A DNA stretch of 64,000 bases. Origin: Antechinus flavipes (Eukaryota). The stretch lies in assembly GCF_016432865.1 (NCBI RefSeq), contig NC_067400.1, positions 1,116,001 to 1,180,000 on the forward strand. The letters are read 5' to 3'. The notes beneath the pieces were generated by a model. The model did not search any database. It was not told the origin of the DNA and saw only the letters and a program-made list of their open reading frames with translations. Below, piece by piece: positions 8,430-64,000 of the stretch. Numbering within the stretch: the first letter of the stretch is position 1; every line of letters starts with the position of its first letter. Both the position numbers and the translations under genes were made by a program.

Positions 8430-9000
8430 AGTGATTTAAGAAAGGTAAACGAACAGATGGAAACTATGGGAACTCTTCAGCCTCCAGCCAGCTCTACTCT
8501 TCATGTCATTCCGGTGAAATCTCTCAAAGTGCTCTGTGTCTGCACCAGAGTGCTCCTCTCCAATGCAGCTGAACTCTCTTCTCGTAGCTTTTTCCTCTGA
8601 AAACTCTTCTTCTGCCACCAGCCAGCCAAGTGGAAAATATTCTCTCTTGCCTTGCCTTGGAGAGAGGGCTTCTGGCGTAATTCCGCTGAAATCTCGACTT
8701 GTAGCTTCTTCACTCTGAAAAACTTCTTTGACTGGCCCATTGAAGCTCTATTTATGTTCCTTCAAGAGAGGGATTGTGGGTTTTCTCCCATAGTGCTCTT
8801 TGGCCCAAAGAGCTTCAAAGGAGGTGTGAACTCATAAAGTTACAAAGTTTACTTTGTGAAACTCCCATACTTGTGAACTCCAATGAGTAAAGGTGTGAAC
8901 ACAAGCCTTGTATTAATTAGTTCTACTTAGTACCTTGTTTCAGGTTCTGGCCCAAAACATCTTCTTGTAAGATTAGATCAACTCCAATTAGTTAGCAGTT
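8430..9000. mobile_element. Probable ERV solo LTR inserted in the L1
   Basis: Non-L1 block interrupting L1 ORF2; repeated gtgaactc motifs resembling marsupial LTRs (recalled). Confidence 0.45.
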
Positions 9001-35945: not shown

Positions 35946-39810
<3,865 letters not shown>

Positions 39811-46581: not shown

Positions 46582-53255
<6,674 letters not shown>

Positions 53256-54270: not shown

Positions 54271-55640
54271 CGCCCCCCTGCCAGCCTTACCCAGGCGCCC
54301 CAGAGACGCCCCCACTGCCTTACCCAGGTGCCCCAGAGATGCCCCCACAGCCTTACCAGGCGCCCCAGAGATGCCCCTGACAGCCTTACCAGGCGCCCCA
54401 GAGATGCCCCCACAGCCTTACCAGGCGCCCCAGAGATGCCCCCACAGCCTTACCAGGCGCCCCAGAGACCCCCCACAGCCTTACCCAGGCGCCCCAGAGA
54501 CGCCCCCACAGCCTTACCCAGGTGCCCCAGAGATGCCCCCACAGCCTTACCCAGGCGCCCCAGAGATGCCCCCACAGCCTTACCCAGGCGCCCCAGAGAC
54601 GCCCCCACAGCCTTACCCAGACGCCCCAGAGACGCCCCCACAGCCTTACCCAGACGCCCCAGAGACGCCCCCACAGCCTTACCCAGGCGCCCCAGAGACG
54701 CCCCCACAGCCTTACCCAGGCGCCCCAGAGACGCCCCCCACAGCCTTACCCAGGCGCCCCAGAGACGCCCCCACAGCCTTACCCAGGCGCCCCAGAGACG
54801 CCCCCACAGCCTTACCCAGGCGCCCCAGAGATGCCCCCACAGCCTTACCAGGCGCCCCAGAGATGCCCCCACAGCCTTACCCAGACGCCCCAGAGATGCC
54901 CCCACTGCCTTACCAGGTGCCCCAGAGATGCCCCCACAGCCTTACCCAGGCGCCCCAGAGATGCCCCCACTGCCTTACCAGGTGCCCCAGAGACGCCCCC
55001 ACAGCCTTACCCAGGCGCCCCAGAGACGCCCCCCTGCCAGCCTTACCAGGCGCCCCAGAGACGCCCCCCTGCCAGCCTTACCAGGTGCCCCAGAGACGCC
55101 CCCCACAGCCTTACCCAGGCGCCCCAGAGACGCCCCCCACAGCCTTACCCAGGCGCCCCAGAGATGCCCCCACAGCCTTACCCAGGCGCCCCAGAGACCC
55201 CCCACAGCCTTACCCAGGCGCCCCAGAGACGCCCCCACAGCCTTACCAGGTGCCCCAGAGACGCCCCCACAGCCTTACCCAGGCGCCCCAGAGACGCCCC
55301 CACAGCCTTACCCAGGCGCCCCAGAGATGCCCCCACAGCCTTACCAGGTGCCCCAGAGACGCCCCCACAGCCTTACCCAGGCGCCCCAGAGACGCCCCCA
55401 CAGCCTTACCCAGGCGCCCCAGAGATGCCCCCACAGCCTTACCCAGGCGCCCCAGAGACGCCCCCACAGCCTTACCCAGGCGCCCCAGAGATGCCCCCAC
55501 TGCCTTACCAGGTGCCCCAGAGACGCCCCCACAGCCTTACCCAGGCGCCCCAGAGACGCCCCCACTGCCTTACCCAGGCGCCCCAGAGACGCCCCCCTGC
55601 CAGCCTTACCAGACGCCCCAGAGACGCCCCCCAGCCTTAC
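54271..55640. repeat. 31-33-bp VNTR (about 43 copies) at the start of putative TEKT1 intron 1
   Basis: cacagccttacccaggcgccccagagacgcccc. Confidence 0.97.
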
Positions 55641-55740
55641 CTTGGCGATCTGGAGAGCGCGAACTCAGGAGCTGCCCCCGAGTTTGTCCACACCGGACTG
55701 CGAACTGGAAGCTGCAAACCCTCAGGTTCCCATGGCAACC
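55641..55740 (-). other. TEKT1: Putative TEKT1 non-coding exon 1
   Basis: Strong donor AAG|GTAAGG at 55641/55640 next to an X-box; 5' end not determinable. Confidence 0.6.
55726..55739. promoter_or_regulatory. RFX X-box (ciliogenesis promoter element)
   Basis: GTTCCCATGGCAAC fits GTTNCCATGGNAAC; extra half-site GTTGCC at 55784-55789. Confidence 0.85.
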
Positions 55741-56687
55741 AAGAACGCGTCTCCCGGGAGATGGGGCTGCGCTCCGCGCGTGCGTTGCCAGGCTTCGCTG
55801 CCCGGCCCCCGCGCGGATCGAGCAGGCGCCCAAGCCTCAACGCCAGCCCCGCGCCGTTGTGGGGTAGAGGGGGAAACCGAGGCAGGGCGCAGGGAAGGGA
55901 AGAAGGGACGGCAAGCTCGGACTCAGGCACGTCCCCAGCCTCTCGGAACCTCGATTTAGCGGTCCGAAAATGGGACGGGGCGGGGCTCTGGCCCCCGCTC
56001 ATCGGGCTGTCCTGCGGACGATGCTCCAGCAGAGGGCGCGGGGAGCTCTCCATCTCCGAGGGTTTCCAACCCAGGCTCCGGAGAGCTGCAGAAGGCGTCT
56101 TCTTCTGGGCGCGGCGGGGAGGGAAGTGCCCCGCAGACTTTGCCATGCCCTACTGATTCCGTCTCCCCACCTGTCACTTGGGGGATTGCGGGCTCGAACA
56201 CGCTTCCAGACCCCAGTCGCGCCCCCTCCAAATCTATCCAATCTAAACCACGAGCGCTTCTCCAACAGCCAATCAGAAGCAAGTAATGAGCCAAGCGCCT
56301 GCCCTCAATGTCTGCTCCGGCCTGAAAGTGAGAGCGGAGGGGCGGGGCTGGGAGGAGGGGCGGGTCCAAGGGAGGGATCGAGGCTGATGGACAGGTCAGG
56401 GGAGGCCCAGATTGCATCTGAGAGGCGGGGCCAGGGGCGGGACCGGGATGGGGGGGGGAGCAGAAATTAAAACTGGGGGCGAGGCCAAGGCAGGATTGAG
56501 TTGAGGCCTTAGTGCGATGGACGTTAGTAGGCGGGACCAGGGCGGGTTTGATTCTGAGGGGGCGTGGCCGCGGCTGACTTGCAAATAAGGGGCGGGGCCA
56601 TAGCGGGATTGAGGCTGAGGGCCGGCCCAGAAGGGGTTGCGGCTGGGGGGCGGGGCACACGCAGTGGGAAGGCTAAGTGAAGCGAAG
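55740..56687. promoter_or_regulatory. Bidirectional CpG-island promoter TEKT1 / SLC25A1-like
   Basis: CCAAT at 56269-56273 (AGCCAATCAG); GC boxes near 56339, 56426, 56589 and 56647; head-to-head genes. Confidence 0.7.
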
Positions 56688-56832
56688 ATGAGGCCGGAGG
56701 TTCTGAGGAGTCCCGGCACTTTGGGGCAAGTCCCTGAGCTCCCTCAACTAGGCCCTAGGCTGGGCCTGGCTGCTGCAGCCCCAGGGTCTGGAGGAGGCAA
56801 GATCACGCACCCGGGAAAGGCGATCCTGGCCG
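56688..56832 (+). CDS. SLC25A1-like exon 1
   Basis: MRPEVLRSP...[22 protein letters not shown]|GTAAC; the start codon choice is inferred. Confidence 0.8.
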
Positions 56833-59800
56833 GTAACGGGGGCGTGGTCACGCGGGGGTGGGGGAGGGGTGCCTGGCGGGGTGGTGGGGAGGGTCCGATT
56901 CCGGGGTCTCCCGGGGGTCACATGAAGGGTTCTAGTGGGCCCCCCCGTGCGGAAAGGCCTGTCATGGAGAGGCCACGGTTATTCCCGCAGATTGGGGGAG
57001 GGGGAGCCATGGTCAACGCCCTAAGCAGCCCCCGCTCCCCTGCCTCCCCCCCAGCGCCCCCTTGGGCTTGGGGAGACTGCGCGCGCGAGAGTCTTCGGGC
57101 CCTGCAGCCCGGGCGGGGCGTCTCCCGGTGAGACCTGGTAACCGCTCCCCTTCCGGAGGCCCCAAGCGCCCTTGTTCTGTCTGGGCCCCGCAGGTGGGAT
57201 CGCGGGCGGCATCGAAATCTGCATCAGCTTCCCCACCGAGTACATCAAGACGCAGCTGCAGCTGGACGAGAGGGCCAAGCAGCCGCGCTACACCAGCATC
57301 CGTGAGGGGCGGGCGGGGGATGGCGGGAAGCAGGCTGGGCCCCCCTCGTGGACCCCCTGTGGGCAGCCAGGGCCCCTCCCCCGGGCAGTCAGGGCCCCTC
57401 CCCCGGGCAGCCAGGGCCCCTCCCCCGGGCAGCCAGGGCCCCTCCCCCGGGCAGTCAGGGCCCCTCCCATGGGCAGTCAGGGCCCCTCCCACGGGCAGCC
57501 AGGGCCCCTCCCACGGGCATTCTGGGACCCTCCCACGGGCTGCCTGGGACCCCACCACGGGCATTCTGGGACCCTCCCCCGGGCATTCTGGGACCCTCCC
57601 CCGGGCAGTCAGGGCCCCTCCCATGGGCAGTCAGGGCCCCTCCCCCAGGCAGCCAGGGCCCCTCCCCCGGGCAGTCAGGGCCCCTCCCCCGGGCAGTCAG
57701 GGCCCCTCCCCCGGGCAGTCAGGGCCCCTCCCCCGGGCAGCCAGGGCCCCTCCCCCGGGCAGTCAGGGACCCTCCCCCGGGCAGCCAGGGCCCCTCCCCC
57801 GGGCAGTCAGGGCCCCTCCCACGGGCAGTCAGGGACCCTCCCCCGGGCAGTCAGGGACCCTCCCACGGGCTGCCTGAGACCCCACCACGGGCTGCCTGGG
57901 ACGCCCCCTCCCTCGCTGACCCCTGTTCCTCTCCCAGTTCACTGTGTGAAGCTGACCATTCAGGAGCACGGCTTCCGGGGCCTCTACAGGGGCCTCAGCT
58001 CCCTGCTCTATGGCTCCATCCCCAAGTCGGCCGTGAGGTGAGTGGCCGGGGGCCATCGGGTCGGTCCCCGTGCTGCCCACAGCCCCAGCAGTTACTCGGA
58101 GGTACCGGTTTGGAGTCAGGAGGAACTGGGTTCAAATCCTGCCTCAGACCCTTAGCTGGGGACCCCCAGCCTCAGTGTCTGCCCGGCTTGTTGGGAGGAC
58201 CCCAGGGGAGAAGGCCCTTCACCAATGAGTCTGGGGCAGGAAGGCTCTGGGGGGCCCCGCCCCGAGGGGAGGGCGTGGGCCCTGGGCAGGGCTTCTCCCC
58301 GGCCTGTCGGCTCTTGGTGCGCCCTAGCTGCTGGACAAGAGGGCCCTCGGCCCCTCTCCCTGCCGACCGGGCTTGGGGCTGCTCTGGTGGAGGTCCCCGA
58401 ACAGCCCCCTGCCCAATCCTCGCCATTGCTGGGTGCCAGCAAGGATGCAACTTTGGGCCCTGCCTGCACAGCCTACGTGGCCCAAGGCAACTTCAGGGCC
58501 GGGCACGGGGATGCCCGCTGATGTTTAGCCCAGGGATGCCCGCTGATGCTTGGCACGGAGATGCCCACTGATGCTTGGCACTCCCAAAGCAACTTCGGGG
58601 CCGGATACGGGGACGCCACTGACGCTTGGCACTCTGCAGGTTCGGCATGTTTGAGTTCCTGAGCAATCGCTTCCGAGATGCCGATGGCAAACTGAGCAAC
58701 AGAAAGAGCTTTCTCTGCGGTCTCGGGGCCGGTGCCACGGAGGCCGTGGTTATTGTCTGTCCTCTGGAAACCATCAAGGTCCGTGCACTCTGAGGCCTGG
58801 GGGTCCCGGAGATGGGCCACAAGTGGGCGACCCAGGCTGGGCTCCCTCCTTCCCGTCCGTGGGGCTGCTCCCTCCAAGGCTGGGGAGGATGGGGAGCAGG
58901 CGGAGGACCGGACTTCAGCGGAAACCTCCCAACGGCGCCCTTCTCTGCAGGACACCGGCGTGGCTGATGGGGGATGGGGAGAGGAGGGGCAGGACGGGGT
59001 CTCCTTTGTCTCTGTCTTGCGGAAGGGGCCCTCTTGGGTTACTTGGCAGAGAGGGCAGCATAATCTCCTGCCCAAGGAGCCCATGCCAGGCCAGAGGGTG
59101 GCATCCCTGGCTGCCCCTGCCAGTGCCAACCTCACATTCCCCAGCGTGGCAGAGAGTGTCAGAGGGAAGGTTTCGTCCCTCGTACAAAACCATCTCGGGA
59201 GGGAGATTCTGGGCTTTGCCGCGTAGGTGCCCGCCCTGGGCAGGGGAGGAGGAAGGGCACAGAGCCCCTGGCCAGGCGGGCTCCAAGAGCCTCGCCACAG
59301 GAACCAGCGGCCCTTCTGTGGTCCACAGGTGAAATTCATTCACAATCAGACGTTCGGAGAAATTAAATACCAAGGATTCTTCCACGGAATCCGTGAGATT
59401 GTGAGGGTACAAGGTACTTGGGGCCCCCCGCCATCCCAACAGCGCGGGCTCCCTCCCCTGGCACTCCCTGTGCCCCTGGGCTGACAGATCTGGTCCTGGG
59501 GGCCGAAAGGAGGCCTCTGCAGCCGCCTGGGTCCCCGGGGTCTTGGGAAGGGGGGGGGATGGGAGGAAGGCCGGAGATGGGCAGCGGCTGGCCCTTCCCA
59601 GGCGTGCAAGGAATCTACCGGGGCCTCACGGCCACCATCATCAAGCAGGGATCCAACCAGGCCATCCGCTTCTTCACAATGACCTCCCTCCGCAACTGGT
59701 ACCAAGGTGAGGGCTGGGCCGGCCGCCACACAGCTCCCTGAGCGTGGCCAGAGGGACCTTGGGAAACGAGCTGCCCGAGGGAAGAGGCCCCAAGGCCCGT

Positions 59801-61552
59801 GGGCAAGGGCAGAGGCTGCCAAGGATTCCAGGCGGTGGCAGAGGAGGGGAAGAGCGCCAAGGCCTCCCCTCCCCCCAGCACCCAAGCGTGGGGAGGCCCC
59901 GGCTGCCACCTGACCGCGCTGGCCTTGATCCCCTCTCCTGGGTCCTCGAAGGCCCTTTGCCGCTGCATGTGCCCCTCCCCCCTCCTCAGCTCTGCCCCCC
60001 TGCAGGACAGCCCAGCCTGGCCCCTCCCCTCTCCCCTACCTGTAGTTGTGTAAACACGCTGAGGGTTTCATGTTCTCCTCAGTAATGAACATCCCCAGGC
60101 TCAGGCCTCGCTCTGCCCTCCAGGGGCCTTGTCCTTTTGGGGTGTCACCCACCTGATAGGGTCACGGAGCCTGGGCCTGTCTTGTCACCTTTAGGATGCT
60201 CAGAGGTCGGTTGTGCTCCCAGGGATGGAGCCGGGGACAAGCAGTGCTCTCAGAGCAGAGTGCTCCCCACTCTGTAGGGCCCCAAAGGGGTTTGGGGTGG
60301 ATTTCAAGGGGTCAGAGAACTTGGACTGGGAGAACATGTAAATAACCACATTGCCACCTAACTGGTCTCCCTTGGTCTCCATATTTTATTTCCTCCATAA
60401 AACAACCTGATTCTGAGAAGGGGCATCTGAAGGCTTCCCCAGCCTGTCACCCGGGGGGCGGGAGGGGGGCTGCCCAAGCAAGGCTCTTTCAGCCAACAGT
60501 CTCAGCATCAGCCGAGATGAGAAAAGTAACGGGGCCCCCCGAGAAAGTCTGGCTCCCGGCGGGGCAGAAAATTAGGGTCCCGGGCTGGGCAGAGCCAAAG
60601 AGAGACTTTCCCCTCAAGGAGCTCAGCTCCTGGGGGAGAGAACGGGGCTTGGTCCAGGGTGAGGTGGTGAGGTTGGTGCTGAGTGGGCAGCGTCTCCAGC
60701 TTTTGCTCCATCTAACACTGAACCCGAATTTCTCCATCAGGTGACAATCCCCAGAAAAAGATCAACCCTTTCATCACAGCCACCTTCGGGATGACCGCAG
60801 GAGCCGCCAGCGTCTTTGGCAACACCCCAGTTGATGTGGTAAAAACACGGATGCAGGTAATGCAAAGGCAGGGGAGCCGGTTCTTGCCCAGGGATAAGAC
60901 AGCCAGAGGAAGAACAACTGATGGGCCCTGCGCCCCCTCGCCCCTCAAAGCCCTTCGTGTTCCATGCCCCTAGAAGGGCGGAGCAACTTGGCTCCTCCAG
61001 TCATGGCAGCCATGAGAAAGGCTGCTGAGACAAATCCAAACGCCTGGAGTCCAAGGCTGCGCCACCCCTCATGCTGACCTAGGGTTAGAGCTGGTGGTGC
61101 CCGCAGACATNNNNNNNNNNNNNNNNNNNNNNNNNNNNNNNNNNNNNNNNNNNNNNNNNNNNNNNNNNNNNNNNNNNNNNNNNNNNNNNNNNNNNNNNNN
61201 NNNNNNNNNNNNNNNNNNNNNNNNNNNNNNNNNNNNNNNNNNNNNNNNNNNNNNNNNNNNNNNNNNNNNNNNNNNNNNNNNNNNNNNNNNNNNNNNNNNN
61301 NNNNNNNNNNNNNNNNNNNNNNNNNNNNNNNNNNNNNNNNNNNNNNNNNNNNNNNNNNNNNNNNNNNNNNNNNNNNNNNNNNNNNNNNNNNNNNNNNNNN
61401 AAACAGACAGACAAATAGATAGAGGAATAGATGGAGATGATAGATAGACAGAGGGATGAATGGAGATGATAGATAGATAGACAGATAGATAGAGGAATGG
61501 ATGGAGATGATAGACAGACAGAGAGAGGGATGGATGGAGATGATAGACAGAC

Positions 61553-61591
<39 letters not shown>

Positions 61592-63154
61592 GGGATGGAT
61601 GGAGATGATAGACAGATGGACAAATAGATAGAAGAATGGATGGAGATGATAGACAGACATAGATGGATGGATGGAGATGATAGATAGATAGACAGACAGA
61701 TAGATGGATGGATGGAGATGATAGATAGACCAACAGACAGACAGATAGATGGATGGATGGAGATGATAGATATAGACAGACTGACAGACAGACAAATAGA
61801 TAGNNNNNNNNNNNNNNNNNNNNNNNNNNNNNNNNNNNNNNNNNNNNNNNNNNNNNNNNNNNNNNNNNNNNNNNNNNNNNNNNNNNNNNNNNNNNNNNNN
61901 NNNNNNNNNNNNNNNNNNNNNNNNNNNNNNNNNNNNNNNNNNNNNNNNNNNNNNNNNNNNNNNNNNNNNNNNGGTAGATGTATAGTTAGACACATGGATG
62001 GACAGTTACATAGATGGGGAGATAGATGAATGGATGGAAATAGATAGAGGGGTGGGTGGGAATAGATAGAGAGAGAGAGAGAGAGAGATGGGTGGTGATG
62101 ATAGAGAGATGGGTGGGAATAGATAGACAGACAGAGGGATGGATGGAGATGAGAGATAGATAGATAGGTAAAAAGAGGGAATGGATGGAGATGATAGACA
62201 GATAGGCATAGATAGATATACTTAGACATACAGCTAGAGATAGATGTATAGTTGGACACATGGATAGACAGTTACATAGATGGGGAGATAGATGAATGGA
62301 TGGATACATAAATATGTAGGTGCATGGGTTGATATACATATATTAATGTGTATATATATATATATATATATAGCTAAACATGTAGTTTGACAGTTACATA
62401 GATGGATGGACAGAAGAATGGGTGGACTAACGGATGCATGGACAGAAGGATAGATGGATACATAGGTGCATGAATCCATGGCAGGATAGACAGCTATACA
62501 CATACTTACGTATATATTTAGATACGTAGTTTAATAGTTACGTAGATGGATAGAAGAATGGGTGGGCAGACAAGACGGTGGGTGGACGGATGGATGGCCA
62601 GATACAGAGGCACATGGTTAGATAGAAAGCTACATGCACACATACATATGTAGCAGACACACAGTTTGATAGACACATGGATGGATGTTTGGATGGATGG
62701 TTGGACGGACGGATGAATAGAGATGCATAGATACGTAAGTACATGGATGGATAAGTAGACATACATACATAGGGAACTAGACACATAGTTTGATAGTCAC
62801 ATAGCTGGATGGACAGACGGATAGACGGATGGATGAGCCGGCAAATAGACGCAAAGATTGCTCCCATCGGCCGGGTCCCTTCTCTCCCCAGCATCTGTGC
62901 TCAGCTGTCGTGTCTTCCCTTTAGACCGCCAACATCCTGGGAGCAGGGATCCCTTCCTATTTATGGAATGGCCCAGTGCCCAGCGCACAGTAGGTGCTAC
63001 ACCCGATTGCTGGCGTAGCTGCCCGCCAAGTTTTGCTTTTCCTTCCCGTGCCCGTCATCGCTGTTCCTCTTTTCTTTCAGAGCCTGGAAGCGAACAAGTA
63101 CAAAAGCACGATTGACTGCATCTCCCAGATCTATAAAAATGAGGGCCTGCTGGC
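56688..63154 (+). CDS. Mitochondrial tricarboxylate (citrate) carrier, SLC25A1-like paralog. Exons 56688-56832, 57194-57301, 57938-58037, 58640-58778, 59329-59413, 59602-59706, 60741-60856, 63081-63154; final exon beyond the window
   Basis: 872 bp in frame, no stops, all GT-AG; three carrier motifs [24 protein letters not shown]; [19 protein letters not shown] and [10 protein letters not shown] as in CIC; exon sizes match SLC25A1 as recalled. Symbol withheld because synteny argues for a paralog. Confidence 0.93.
57194..57301 (+). CDS. SLC25A1-like exon 2
   Basis: [26 protein letters not shown]; 108 bp. Confidence 0.95.
57355..57900. repeat. 22-bp GC-rich VNTR (about 24 copies) filling SLC25A1-like intron 2
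   Basis: gggcagtcagggcccctccccc; period 22 (57361, 57383, 57405). Confidence 0.95.
57938..58037 (+). CDS. SLC25A1-like exon 3
   Basis: [33 protein letters not shown]; 100 bp. Confidence 0.95.
58640..58778 (+). CDS. SLC25A1-like exon 4
   Basis: FGMFEFLSN...[21 protein letters not shown]; 139 bp. Confidence 0.95.
59329..59413 (+). CDS. SLC25A1-like exon 5
   Basis: [29 protein letters not shown]; 85 bp. Confidence 0.95.
59602..59706 (+). CDS. SLC25A1-like exon 6
   Basis: [33 protein letters not shown]; 105 bp. Confidence 0.95.
60741..60856 (+). CDS. SLC25A1-like exon 7
   Basis: [38 protein letters not shown]; 116 bp. Confidence 0.95.
61401..62830. repeat. (GATA/GGAT/GACA)n simple-repeat tract with gaps in SLC25A1-like intron 7
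   Basis: Direct reading. Confidence 0.9.
63081..63154 (+). CDS. SLC25A1-like exon 8
   Basis: [25 protein letters not shown]; 74 bp; GC|GTAAGT. Confidence 0.93.
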
Positions 63155-64000
63155 GTAAGTGCCTCGGGACACCCGAGCTGCCCCGACTTTCCTTGACAGG
63201 AAGGCCAGGCCTTCCTTTCTCCCCGTTGGGAGGGTCCCCACGGTGTCATGTGGCGTCGTCTGGCCATTTCTCTCTGATGATTTAACCCTGAAATTCAGCC
63301 TTGGTGCCCCCACGTCCAGACCCCAGAGAGACAAGGAGCCAAGCCAGGGTCCTGGTGGGGGAGGGGGTCCAGGGCACGCTTGGACTTCCCCCGACTCATG
63401 TCCTACTTCGTGTCAGCATCCAGCTCCGTGCAGCATATTTTTAAAAGCCCAAGAGGGTTATGGGAGCACCTGAAGGATTGTACCAGCCTCAGAGGAGGGA
63501 GGAGCCCCTGAGTGGGGAGGATCTCCTGTGGGCTGACTGGCCCCAGTCGGGGTTTTCAGCAGGGGATCACCCAGAGGCTGATACTTTGCTGAGGAGGAGG
63601 AGGGGGAGGCTGTCCAGCCTCAGGAAGCCCAGAGTTCTCTCTCACCTATCAGGTCTTTGGCCTTGGGGTCTGAATCCCTCCCTTAGGCCCTCCCCAGCCT
63701 CTCAGAGAACCCCTCTTTGAGGGAATCGCCCAGTGAGATCCTGAAGGTCAGTGGTCATCTCTGGGTCTTTAGGACAGTCCCCAGACTGGAGGTGAGGAGG
63801 AGAAATGTTCATTTTAAAAACATTGAGTTCCAATTGTCTCGCTCCCTCTCCCCGCCGCCTCCTTGAGAAGGCAAGCTATTCACCACAGGTCATACACATG
63901 TAGTTACAAAACCATTTCCATCGTAGTCACGCTTTCAAGAAAAGTGAAGGAAAAATTTCAAGTGTGCTCCCTCTGCATTCAGACACGCGGTTCCTTCTCT

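What the first reader, a model, noticed from the sequence alone, without database searches (positions are those of the whole stretch)
55641..56832. Head-to-head promoter coupling a tektin gene and the citrate carrier under an RFX X-box: possible sperm/cilia-specific metabolic module
Seen: the putative TEKT1 exon 1 and the SLC25A1-like ATG are about 1 kb apart in one CpG island, with a near-perfect X-box (55726-55739), a CCAAT box and several GC boxes. Known: RFX2/3 X-boxes drive motile-cilia and sperm-flagellum genes. Inference: the paralog may be co-expressed in testis or multiciliated cells, supplying citrate exchange for flagellar-midpiece mitochondria. That would give a reason for keeping it in non-eutherians.
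Basis: inference. Interest (0 to 1): 0.7.

Follow-up and report, generated by a model that had tools for sequence, protein, structure and literature searches.

The report
Conserved TEKT1 X-box beside citrate-carrier paralog
A strongly conserved RFX-binding site marks the start of the sperm and cilia gene TEKT1, which has sat head to head with a second mitochondrial citrate-carrier gene since early bony vertebrates; the site looks like TEKT1's own switch, and nothing shows that it also drives the carrier.

Summary
TEKT1 lies on the minus strand (coding exons 53162-46585) and an intact SLC25A1-like carrier on the plus strand (ATG 56688). They are head to head in one CpG island. The island holds the window's only X-box (GTTCCCATGGCAAC, 55726-55739), a conserved CCAAT box (56269-56273) and a cluster of GC boxes.

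The X-box block ties for the most conserved 30 bp of the intergenic region across six marsupials. It recurs 84-85 nt upstream of the TEKT1 exon-1 donor in a shrew, whose 36-kb locus shows no carrier exon. It is also found in a lizard and, as a core, in bowfin, 3.7 kb from the carrier. Mouse Tekt1 is a published RFX2 ChIP-seq target. So the site is best explained by TEKT1 alone.

The carrier has its own CCAAT/Sp1-type promoter, like human SLC25A1. It belongs to the old slc25a1a-type clade kept by most non-eutherian vertebrates, so its retention needs no sperm-specific reason.

One point favours coupling. NCBI models in three dasyurids include an upstream first exon (1b, reaching at least 55970) that starts near the X-box, but it skips the canonical start codon. 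No RNA runs were available, so co-expression is untested.

The parts
55726..55739 (.). Palindromic RFX X-box GTTCCCATGGCAAC. It sits in a conserved block (55714-55754) that also holds an invariant GCAAAC (a forkhead-like core on the TEKT1 strand) and ACGCGTCTCC.
   Evidence: only match in 64 kb; 25 of 30 columns invariant in six marsupials (background 25%). Identical in devil; GTTCCCATAGCAAC in dunnart; GTTCCCATGGCAGC in koala and Dromiciops. Shrew, lizard and bowfin counterparts.
55641..55725 (-). Inferred non-coding TEKT1 exon 1. The 5' end is unknown. The donor is CCAAG|gtaagg, and the exon's last base is 55641.
   Evidence: The donor GT and the flanking block (55651-55680, 23 of 30 invariant) are conserved in six marsupials. 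The shrew has a GTAAGT donor 84 nt after its X-box. There is no RNA evidence.
54282..55641 (.). 33-bp tandem repeat (about 41 copies) filling TEKT1 intron 1 up to the exon-1 donor.
   Evidence: Only about 2 copies in dunnart.
52973..53179 (-). TEKT1 exon 2, the first coding exon (ATG 53162-53160, Kozak GCCACCATGG). An acceptor ccttccccag lies just upstream.
46585..51181 (-). Remaining six TEKT1 coding exons (approximate: 51181-51014, 50295-50155, 49871-49731, 48876-48649, 47251-47024, 46749-46585).
   Evidence: Pfam Tektin profile covered 1-383. Best solved-structure matches are Tektin-1. tblastn with devil tektin-1 gives 85-98% identity.
55970..56327 (+). Annotated alternative first exon 1b of the carrier (5' end unknown, at or before 55970). 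Its donor at 56327|56328 splices to exon 2. It contains the conserved GC box at 55977-55986 and the CCAAT block.
   Evidence: Antechinus isoforms X1 and X2 (P0132, P0016) match this stretch 100% and then continue in exon 2. Devil X1 and dunnart X2 end at the same junction (…PES|GIAGG). The upstream ORFs differ between the three species.
56269..56273 (+). CCAAT box inside the conserved block 56257-56286.
   Evidence: 21 of 30 columns invariant in six marsupials.
56336..56660 (+). Degenerate direct-repeat array carrying GC (Sp1-type) boxes at 56339, 56434, 56589 and 56647. This is the presumed proximal promoter of the canonical carrier transcript.
   Evidence: Poorly conserved (61 of 325 columns invariant). 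An 18-bp deletion removes the first box in two related organisms, and the devil has a gap there.
56688..56832 (+). Canonical carrier exon 1 (ATG 56688; the exon's last base is 56832, followed by the intron start gtaacg).
   Evidence: 100% match to Antechinus isoform X3, P0130.
57195..63155 (+). Carrier exons 2-8 (approximate: 57195-57303, 57940-58038, 58638-58784, 59326-59415, 59601-59711, 60740-60860, 63080-63155). The last exon lies beyond the window.

Best explanation
The X-box is the conserved core-promoter element of TEKT1. RFX factors (RFX2 in spermatids, RFX2/3 with FOXJ1 in multiciliated cells) most likely bind it and start TEKT1 transcription leftwards, through a short non-coding exon 1 that ends 85 nt away. 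This step is inferred from motif, position, conservation and mouse data.

The slc25a1a-type citrate carrier on the other strand is an ancient head-to-head neighbour. The pairing is shown in lizard and bowfin. The carrier keeps its own promoter of the CCAAT (NF-Y) plus GC-box (Sp1) kind, 0.5-0.9 kb from the X-box. That promoter gives the canonical mRNA starting with ATG 56688; the promoter type is shown but its activity is inferred.

The TEKT1-proximal part of the CpG island probably also fires rightwards. That would give the annotated exon 1b, which splices past the canonical start codon and so is more likely a by-product or non-productive leader than a sperm-specific carrier. The junction is annotated in three species; its tissue and its meaning are inferred.
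For: X-box and TEKT1:
- Unique, non-random X-box.
- Joint most conserved 30-bp window of the intergenic region in six marsupials.
- The X-box-to-donor spacing is the same in shrew (84 nt) and Antechinus (85 nt), and no carrier exon is found in the 36-kb shrew locus.
- X-box-like sites at the TEKT1 5' end in lizard (GTCGCCATGGGGAC) and bowfin (core CGCCATGGCAAC), 1.3 kb and 3.7 kb from the carrier ATG.
- Mouse Tekt1 is listed as an RFX2 ChIP-seq target, and its promoter reporter is activated 8-15 fold by Foxj1.
- RFX ChIP peaks centre just upstream of transcription start sites (PMC7498320).

The carrier's own promoter:
- Conserved CCAAT block and GC-box cluster.
- Multi-CCAAT promoters in the lizard and bowfin orthologues.
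- Human SLC25A1 has a CpG-island promoter with seven Sp1 sites (PMC4009865).

Age of the pairing and of the paralog:
- Head-to-head Tektin/Mito_carr pairing in devil, dunnart, possum, Dromiciops, lizard and bowfin. In koala the divergent upstream gene has no Pfam family on record, but it carries carrier exons by tblastn.
- The tree places the gene with the 'A/-like' clade.

Exon 1b:
- Annotated in three dasyurids with one shared donor and with non-conserved upstream ORFs.
Against: - No RNA data for any tissue were reachable (the laid runs were DNA contigs). No transcription start site, strand or tissue pattern is shown.
- Exon 1b shows that plus-strand transcripts can begin close to the X-box, which is what a shared bidirectional promoter would give.
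- X-boxes are palindromic and act in either orientation, and 0.5-0.95 kb is within reach of a promoter-proximal activator.
- The pairing has survived since the bony-vertebrate ancestor (more than 400 My by my estimate), which could itself reflect shared regulation.
- Mouse Tekt1 is RFX2-bound but was not differentially expressed in Rfx2-/- testis, so even the TEKT1 link may be redundant with other factors.
- Only 1.3 kb beyond the shrew X-box was visible.
Confidence: 0.6

Rival explanations
1. The island is one shared bidirectional promoter, and RFX binding at the X-box co-activates TEKT1 and the carrier in spermatids and multiciliated cells. This would make the paralog a flagellum or cilia-linked citrate carrier.
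For: - Head-to-head genes in one CpG island.
- Annotated carrier exon 1b begins within 230 bp of the X-box in Antechinus, and the devil model's CDS starts at the ATG inside the X-box.
- The pairing is conserved from bowfin to marsupials.
- The carrier sits on a long branch in the tree, yet it is nearly identical among three dasyurids. That fits a changed but constrained role.
- Testis-specific mitochondrial carrier paralogs are known, for example SLC25A31 (from my own knowledge).
Against: - X-box conservation is fully explained by TEKT1, given the shrew with no carrier exon in its 36-kb locus and the 3.7-kb distance in bowfin.
- Exon 1b skips the canonical ATG and the residues that begin transmembrane helix 1, and its upstream ORFs are not conserved between Antechinus, devil and dunnart. 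X-box-proximal transcripts would therefore not encode the normal carrier.
- The canonical exon has a separate CCAAT/Sp1 promoter.
- Zebrafish slc25a1a knock-down gives broad developmental defects, not a cilia-only phenotype (PMC4487986; PMC4746751). Those are morpholino data, and orthology is assumed from naming and from the tree.
Confidence: 0.2
2. The two genes are fully independent. Exon 1b is an artefact of gene-model building, for example unstranded TEKT1 5' reads or ORF extension in GC-rich DNA, and no carrier-strand transcription starts near the X-box.
For: - The N-terminal extensions differ wildly between species: 400 aa in Antechinus, 436 in devil, 301 in dunnart, 508 in koala and 582 in possum. 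The possum model starts antisense in TEKT1's own Kozak palindrome.
- Long open frames are common in this GC-rich DNA.
Against: The same GT donor (56327|56328) joined to exon 2 appears in three independent annotations. A spliced junction fixes the strand.
Confidence: 0.15
3. The X-box is a chance match without function.
For: No binding data exist for this species. The motif has one mismatch to the vertebrate consensus on either strand.
Against: - About 0.002 sites are expected in the 1.2-kb stretch.
- It is in the joint top conserved window in six marsupials.
- It is retained, with conserved spacing to the exon-1 donor, in a eutherian.
- The mouse orthologue is RFX2-bound.
Confidence: 0.03

Closest known systems
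RFX X-box promoters of motile-cilia and sperm-flagellum genes (mouse Tekt1 and Tekt4 as RFX2 ChIP-seq targets; FOXJ1/RFX modules)
   Same: A palindromic 14-mer next to the 5' end of a tektin gene, conserved across mammals, with a forkhead-like core 5 nt away. The mouse orthologue is RFX2-bound, and its promoter responds to Foxj1.
   Different: Binding was not tested in any marsupial. Non-dasyurid marsupials carry GCAGC instead of GCAAC in one half-site. Here the island also faces a second gene that eutherians do not appear to have at this locus.
Bidirectional CpG-island promoters (head-to-head genes with start sites less than 1 kb apart)
   Same: Opposite strands, one CpG island, about 1 kb between TEKT1 exon 1 and the carrier ATG, and an annotated upstream carrier exon that starts beside the TEKT1 promoter.
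   Different: Start sites are not mapped. Two separately conserved motif clusters (the X-box block and the CCAAT/GC boxes) lie about 530 bp apart. In bowfin the same two promoters are about 3.2-3.7 kb apart, so sharing is not ancestral.
Human SLC25A1 (CIC) promoter
   Same: TATA-less CpG-island promoter with multiple Sp1 GC boxes within about 300 bp of the ATG (PMC4009865). The window has four such boxes in the 350 bp before ATG 56688.
   Different: The human promoter is described as lacking a CCAAT box, whereas the paralog keeps a conserved CCAAT. The window's GC boxes sit in a fast-changing repeat array.
Fish slc25a1a ('tricarboxylate transport protein A')
   Same: Same clade in the tree, and the bowfin member is likewise head to head with a tektin gene and followed by a CH-domain gene.
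   Different: The marsupial protein sits on a long branch (67% best identity to other vertebrates). Part of that comes from the spurious N-terminus of the model that was used.

Membership tests
RFX X-box (ciliary/flagellar gene promoter element) | Match to the X-box consensus (GTNRCC N0-3 RGYAAC; nematode form GTHNYYATRRNAAC) | tested here: met
   Full match to GTHNYYATRRNAAC on both strands, and one mismatch to the vertebrate form. It is the only such site in 64 kb, where 0.18 strand-matches are expected.
RFX X-box (ciliary/flagellar gene promoter element) | Lies close to the transcription start of a cilia or flagellum gene | tested here: inconclusive
   It lies 85 nt upstream of the conserved donor of the inferred TEKT1 exon 1, with the same spacing in shrew. 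No transcription start site data were available.
RFX X-box (ciliary/flagellar gene promoter element) | Evolutionary conservation above its surroundings | tested here: met
   25 of 30 columns are invariant against a 25% background in six marsupials. Counterparts exist in shrew, lizard and bowfin.
RFX X-box (ciliary/flagellar gene promoter element) | Bound by an RFX factor, and expression depends on it | not testable with these tools
   Only by analogy. Mouse Tekt1 is an RFX2 ChIP-seq target but is not differentially expressed in Rfx2-/- testis (PMC4498915 Table S1).
Bidirectional promoter | Two genes on opposite strands, head to head | tested here: met
   TEKT1 is on the minus strand and the carrier on the plus strand. 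The same layout is seen in devil, dunnart, lizard and bowfin.
Bidirectional promoter | Transcription start sites less than 1 kb apart | tested here: inconclusive
   1047 bp separate the exon-1 donor from the carrier ATG. Annotated exon 1b reaches to at least 55970, which is 231 bp from the X-box. No 5'-end data were available.
Bidirectional promoter | Correlated expression of the two genes | not testable with these tools
   No RNA run holds the locus.
Tektin-1 | Full Tektin domain, and closest to Tektin-1 among tektins | tested here: met
   Pfam PF03148 positions 1-383 are covered by seven exon pieces. The best solved-structure matches are Tektin-1 (E 3e-26, against 4e-20 for Tektin-4). Identity to devil tektin-1 is 85-98%.
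Mitochondrial citrate carrier, slc25a1a-type paralog | Mito_carr repeats, and grouping with the 'A/-like' clade rather than with SLC25A1 proper | tested here: met
   PF00153 hits. In the tree of 39 proteins the dasyurid sequence falls with the fish A and shark '-like' proteins, outside the clade that holds eutherian SLC25A1 (support 93). The tetrapod '-like' proteins, including the TEKT1-adjacent lizard one, form a separate group at an unresolved fork. Support 83-88, with a long branch. Citrate transport itself was not tested.

The most novel reading that the evidence does not exclude
In dasyurid marsupials the TEKT1 X-box promoter may truly fire in both directions. In that case exon 1b would be a testis or ciliated-cell-specific first exon of the citrate-carrier paralog. 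It would either produce an N-terminally altered carrier for flagellar mitochondria, or switch the canonical carrier off by reading through its promoter and skipping its start codon.
Probability: 0.2. Interest if true: 0.5.

Novelty: new member of a known kind. Interest (0 to 1): 0.3.

Why it matters
The result gives a clean, deeply conserved example of an RFX X-box with fixed spacing to the first splice donor of TEKT1, from marsupials to a eutherian. It shows that TEKT1 and the slc25a1a-type citrate carrier have been head-to-head neighbours since early bony vertebrates, and that eutherians seem to have lost the carrier.

It replaces the idea of a 'sperm metabolic module' with a precise and cheap test. 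In stranded testis and liver RNA-seq of Antechinus, devil or dunnart, count three splice junctions: TEKT1 exon 1-2, carrier exon 1-2 and carrier exon 1b-2. If exon 1b proved testis-specific, the locus would be a tidy natural case of a cilia-gene promoter capturing or silencing a metabolic neighbour.

Tried and rejected
- RNA evidence. The one run search returned six holders, none on record as RNA. Laying four of them gave only genomic contigs of three related organisms. The X-box was unchanged, which carries little weight at about 2% divergence.
- Logan transcripts. The 90% cluster of the dasyurid carrier holds only NCBI and UniRef models and one 55-aa JGI piece, so no transcript contig could be fetched.
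- Solved structures for the carrier ORF: no hit.
- Frog locus (Rana). Nothing lies within 10 kb upstream, so it is uninformative. The shark locus came without DNA. Antechinus isoform X2 was not on record for a locus look-up.
- Supplementary tables of the RFX1-3 ependymal paper are not held.
- A paper that seemed to mention slc25a1a turned out to be about mouse Slc25a1-AKO.
- Chance as an explanation for the X-box was rejected. A second X-box near the canonical carrier start was looked for and not found.
Exons were searched by reference one at a time, and database proteins stood in for the full-length products.
- No N stretch was filled, and no human contig was fetched or compared.

Full report
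**What is there.**
- The minus strand carries TEKT1. Seven exon pieces (53162-52974, 51181-51014, 50295-50155, 49871-49731, 48876-48649, 47251-47024, 46749-46585) cover the Pfam Tektin profile from position 1 to 383.
- These pieces match solved Tektin-1 chains better than any other tektin. They are 85-98% identical to devil tektin-1.
- The plus strand carries a mitochondrial carrier gene (Pfam Mito_carr). Its exon 1 (ATG 56688 to 56832) is identical to 'tricarboxylate transport protein, mitochondrial-like isoform X3' of Antechinus flavipes.
- The window is therefore that species or something nearly identical to it.
Exons were searched one at a time by reference, and database proteins were used for full-length comparisons.

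**The observation.**
- GTTCCCATGGCAAC lies at 55726-55739. It is the only site in 64 kb that fits GTHNYYATRRNAAC.
- Shuffles give 0.18 strand-matches per window, and a palindrome counts twice. About 0.002 sites are therefore expected in the 1.2-kb stretch of the finding.
- From about 55600 to 57400 the DNA is a CpG island, with GC 0.61-0.73 and CpG observed/expected mostly 0.58-0.88.
- A CCAAT box lies at 56269-56273.
- Five of the window's eight GGGGCGGGRC matches fall in 55977-56656, all on the plus strand, where 0.65 are expected for the whole window. Four of them sit in a degenerate direct-repeat array at 56336-56660.
- The TEKT1 ATG exon has an acceptor (ccttccccag) 17 nt before a Kozak-type ATG. 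About 2.5 kb upstream, a GT donor (CCAAG|gtaagg, last exon base 55641) sits 85 nt from the X-box.

**Comparative evidence for the X-box.**
- I fetched the TEKT1 or carrier locus of devil (two assemblies), koala, Dromiciops, brushtail possum, fat-tailed dunnart, Etruscan shrew, sand lizard, common frog and bowfin.
- In a six-marsupial alignment of the intergenic region, the 30-bp window 55725-55754 has 25 invariant columns. That ties it with the 3' end of carrier exon 1 as the most conserved window, against a background of 25%.
- TEKT1 exon 1 next to its donor (55651-55680, 23 of 30) and the CCAAT block (56257-56286, 21 of 30) come next.
- The X-box is identical in devil and reads GTTCCCATAGCAAC in dunnart, which is still a consensus match. 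Koala and Dromiciops have GTTCCCATGGCAGC, and possum has GTTCCCACGGCAGC.
- An invariant GCAAAC lies 5 nt to the left. On the TEKT1 strand it reads TGTTTGC or TGTTTGT in the three non-dasyurids, which is a forkhead-type core. That assignment is my inference.
- The shrew has GTTGCCATGGAGAC, preceded by the same ACGCGT, 8.7 kb upstream of its TEKT1 coding start. A GTAAGT donor follows 84 nt after it, the same spacing as in Antechinus.
- No carrier exon is detectable in the 36-kb shrew locus, although only 1.3 kb beyond its X-box was visible.
- The lizard has GTCGCCATGGGGAC 1.5 kb from its TEKT1 ATG and 1.3 kb from the carrier ATG.
- Bowfin keeps the core CGCCATGGCAAC about 0.7 kb from tekt1 and 3.7 kb from the carrier.

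**Published support for the TEKT1 link.**
- Mouse Tekt1 is listed as an RFX2 ChIP-seq target in testis, although it was not differentially expressed in Rfx2-/- testes (PMC4498915, Table S1).
- A mouse Tekt1 promoter reporter is activated 8-15 fold by Foxj1 and less than two-fold by Rfx3 alone (bioRxiv 10.1101/2024.10.28.620684).
- RFX ChIP peaks centre just upstream of transcription start sites (PMC7498320).
- The X-box is therefore best read as TEKT1's own, old promoter element.

**The carrier and its promoter.**
- A tree of 39 citrate-carrier proteins separates SLC25A1 proper from the other vertebrate carriers. SLC25A1 proper comprises the eutherians, squamate and toad SLC25A1, fish 'B' and hagfish. 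The others are fish 'A' (slc25a1a) and the '-like' genes of sharks, coelacanth, amphibians, turtles, a gharial and lizards.
- The dasyurid protein falls with the fish 'A' and shark proteins, on a long branch (support 83-88, quick search). Part of that branch comes from the spurious N-terminus of the model used.
- The lizard and bowfin members of this second set are head to head with a tektin gene and are followed by a CH-domain gene. The pairing therefore goes back to the bony-vertebrate ancestor.
- Keeping the paralog is the ancestral state, and it is the eutherian loss that needs explaining.
- The lizard carrier has 3 CCAAT boxes directly upstream of its ATG, and the bowfin carrier has 7. 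In bowfin they are separated from the tekt1 X-box region by about 3 kb of AT-rich DNA.
- In marsupials the CCAAT block is conserved, whereas the GC-box array changes quickly. An 18-bp deletion removes its first box in two related organisms, and the devil has a gap there.
- Human SLC25A1 likewise uses a CpG-island promoter with seven Sp1 sites (PMC4009865).
- From exon 2 onwards the dasyurid carriers are almost identical in Antechinus, devil and dunnart, so the protein is under strong constraint.

**The one point in favour of coupling.**
- NCBI models in three dasyurids include an isoform whose first exon lies upstream of the canonical one. This exon 1b uses a single shared donor (window 56327|56328) spliced to exon 2 at 57195.
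- The three models are:
  - Antechinus X1 and X2 match the window 100% from 55970.
  - Devil X1 has its annotated start codon at the ATG inside the X-box.
  - Dunnart X2 has its start codon 8 nt after the CCAAT box.
- Plus-strand transcripts therefore probably begin in the TEKT1-proximal part of the island.
- However, exon 1b skips the canonical ATG and the residues (…HPGKAILAG) that begin helix 1. Its upstream reading frames also differ in all three species.
- It therefore behaves as a non-coding leader, and such transcripts would not encode the normal carrier.
- Koala and possum models carry even longer, mutually unrelated extensions. The possum canonical ATG reads ACG, which warns that part of this is model-building noise.

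**What could not be done.**
- No RNA run holds this locus, and the four runs laid were genomic contigs. Start sites, strands and tissues are therefore unknown.
- Zebrafish slc25a1a knock-down gives broad developmental defects (PMC4487986, PMC4746751). This argues against a cilia-only role in fish, but the data are from morpholinos and orthology rests on naming and my tree.

**Verdict.**
- The X-box-TEKT1 link is strongly supported and matches what is known in mouse.
- The proposed coupling of the carrier, and the 'reason for keeping it', are not supported by the architecture or the phylogeny, but they are not excluded.
- The best reading (0.6) is two neighbouring promoters in one island, with some divergent transcription from the TEKT1 side. 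A truly shared RFX-driven promoter gets 0.2.
- Interest is modest (0.3). This is a new, well-conserved example of a known kind of element, plus a simple junction-counting test.

Noticed in passing
window 54282-55641: A 33-bp tandem repeat (about 41 copies) fills TEKT1 intron 1 right up to the exon-1 donor, and each unit contains a GGTAAGG-like string. The dunnart has only about 2 copies, and the devil has several 33/66-bp copies. The array therefore expanded within dasyurids.
   Followed up: partly
window 55850-55965: The conserved stretch between the X-box and the GC box at 55977 resembles two opposed pieces of a MIR-type SINE core (…GGAAACTGAGGC… and …CCTCAGTTTAC…AAAATGGG). I recognised it from memory, and no repeat library was available to test it.
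   Followed up: no
L005 about 6870 (brushtail possum): The position of the canonical carrier start codon reads ACG instead of ATG. The annotated 582-aa possum model instead starts antisense in the CCATGG of TEKT1's own start codon.
   Followed up: no
L007 about 7480 and 8669-8740 (sand lizard): There are two copies of an 'X-box plus GATTGGCTG (CCAAT) plus GAATGAATGAATGAA' module about 1.2 kb apart. The copy nearer TEKT1 is CpG-poor and looks like a decayed duplicate.
   Followed up: no
window 57361-57870: A 22-bp tandem repeat (23 copies) in carrier intron 2 keeps an open frame, so exon 2, the intron and exon 3 read as one 289-aa ORF. This is a trap for ORF-based gene calls.
   Followed up: no
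window 56336-56353: An 18-bp deletion that removes the first GC box of the array is seen in contigs of two related organisms (runs X3 and X6). The devil has a gap at the same place.
   Followed up: partly
window 36069-37391 (+): A long single-exon ORF is the counterpart of the F-box gene found downstream of TEKT1 in devil, koala and possum. From its sequence and from memory I take it for FBXO39, which would fit the FBXO39-TEKT1 order that I recall from human 17p13.1.
   Followed up: no
L007 17171-25387; L009 17844-23775: A CH-domain gene lies tail to tail downstream of the carrier in both lizard and bowfin. A 464-aa gene in the same position in dunnart has no family on record. Its identity as SMTNL2 is a guess from memory. 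If right, it would point to a eutherian rearrangement at the spot where the carrier was lost.
   Followed up: no
P0130, P0129, P0135 (dasyurid carrier proteins): From exon 2 onwards the carrier is almost identical in Antechinus, devil and dunnart. Yet it sits on a long branch relative to other vertebrates (best identity 67%), which suggests an old burst of change followed by strong constraint.
   Followed up: partly
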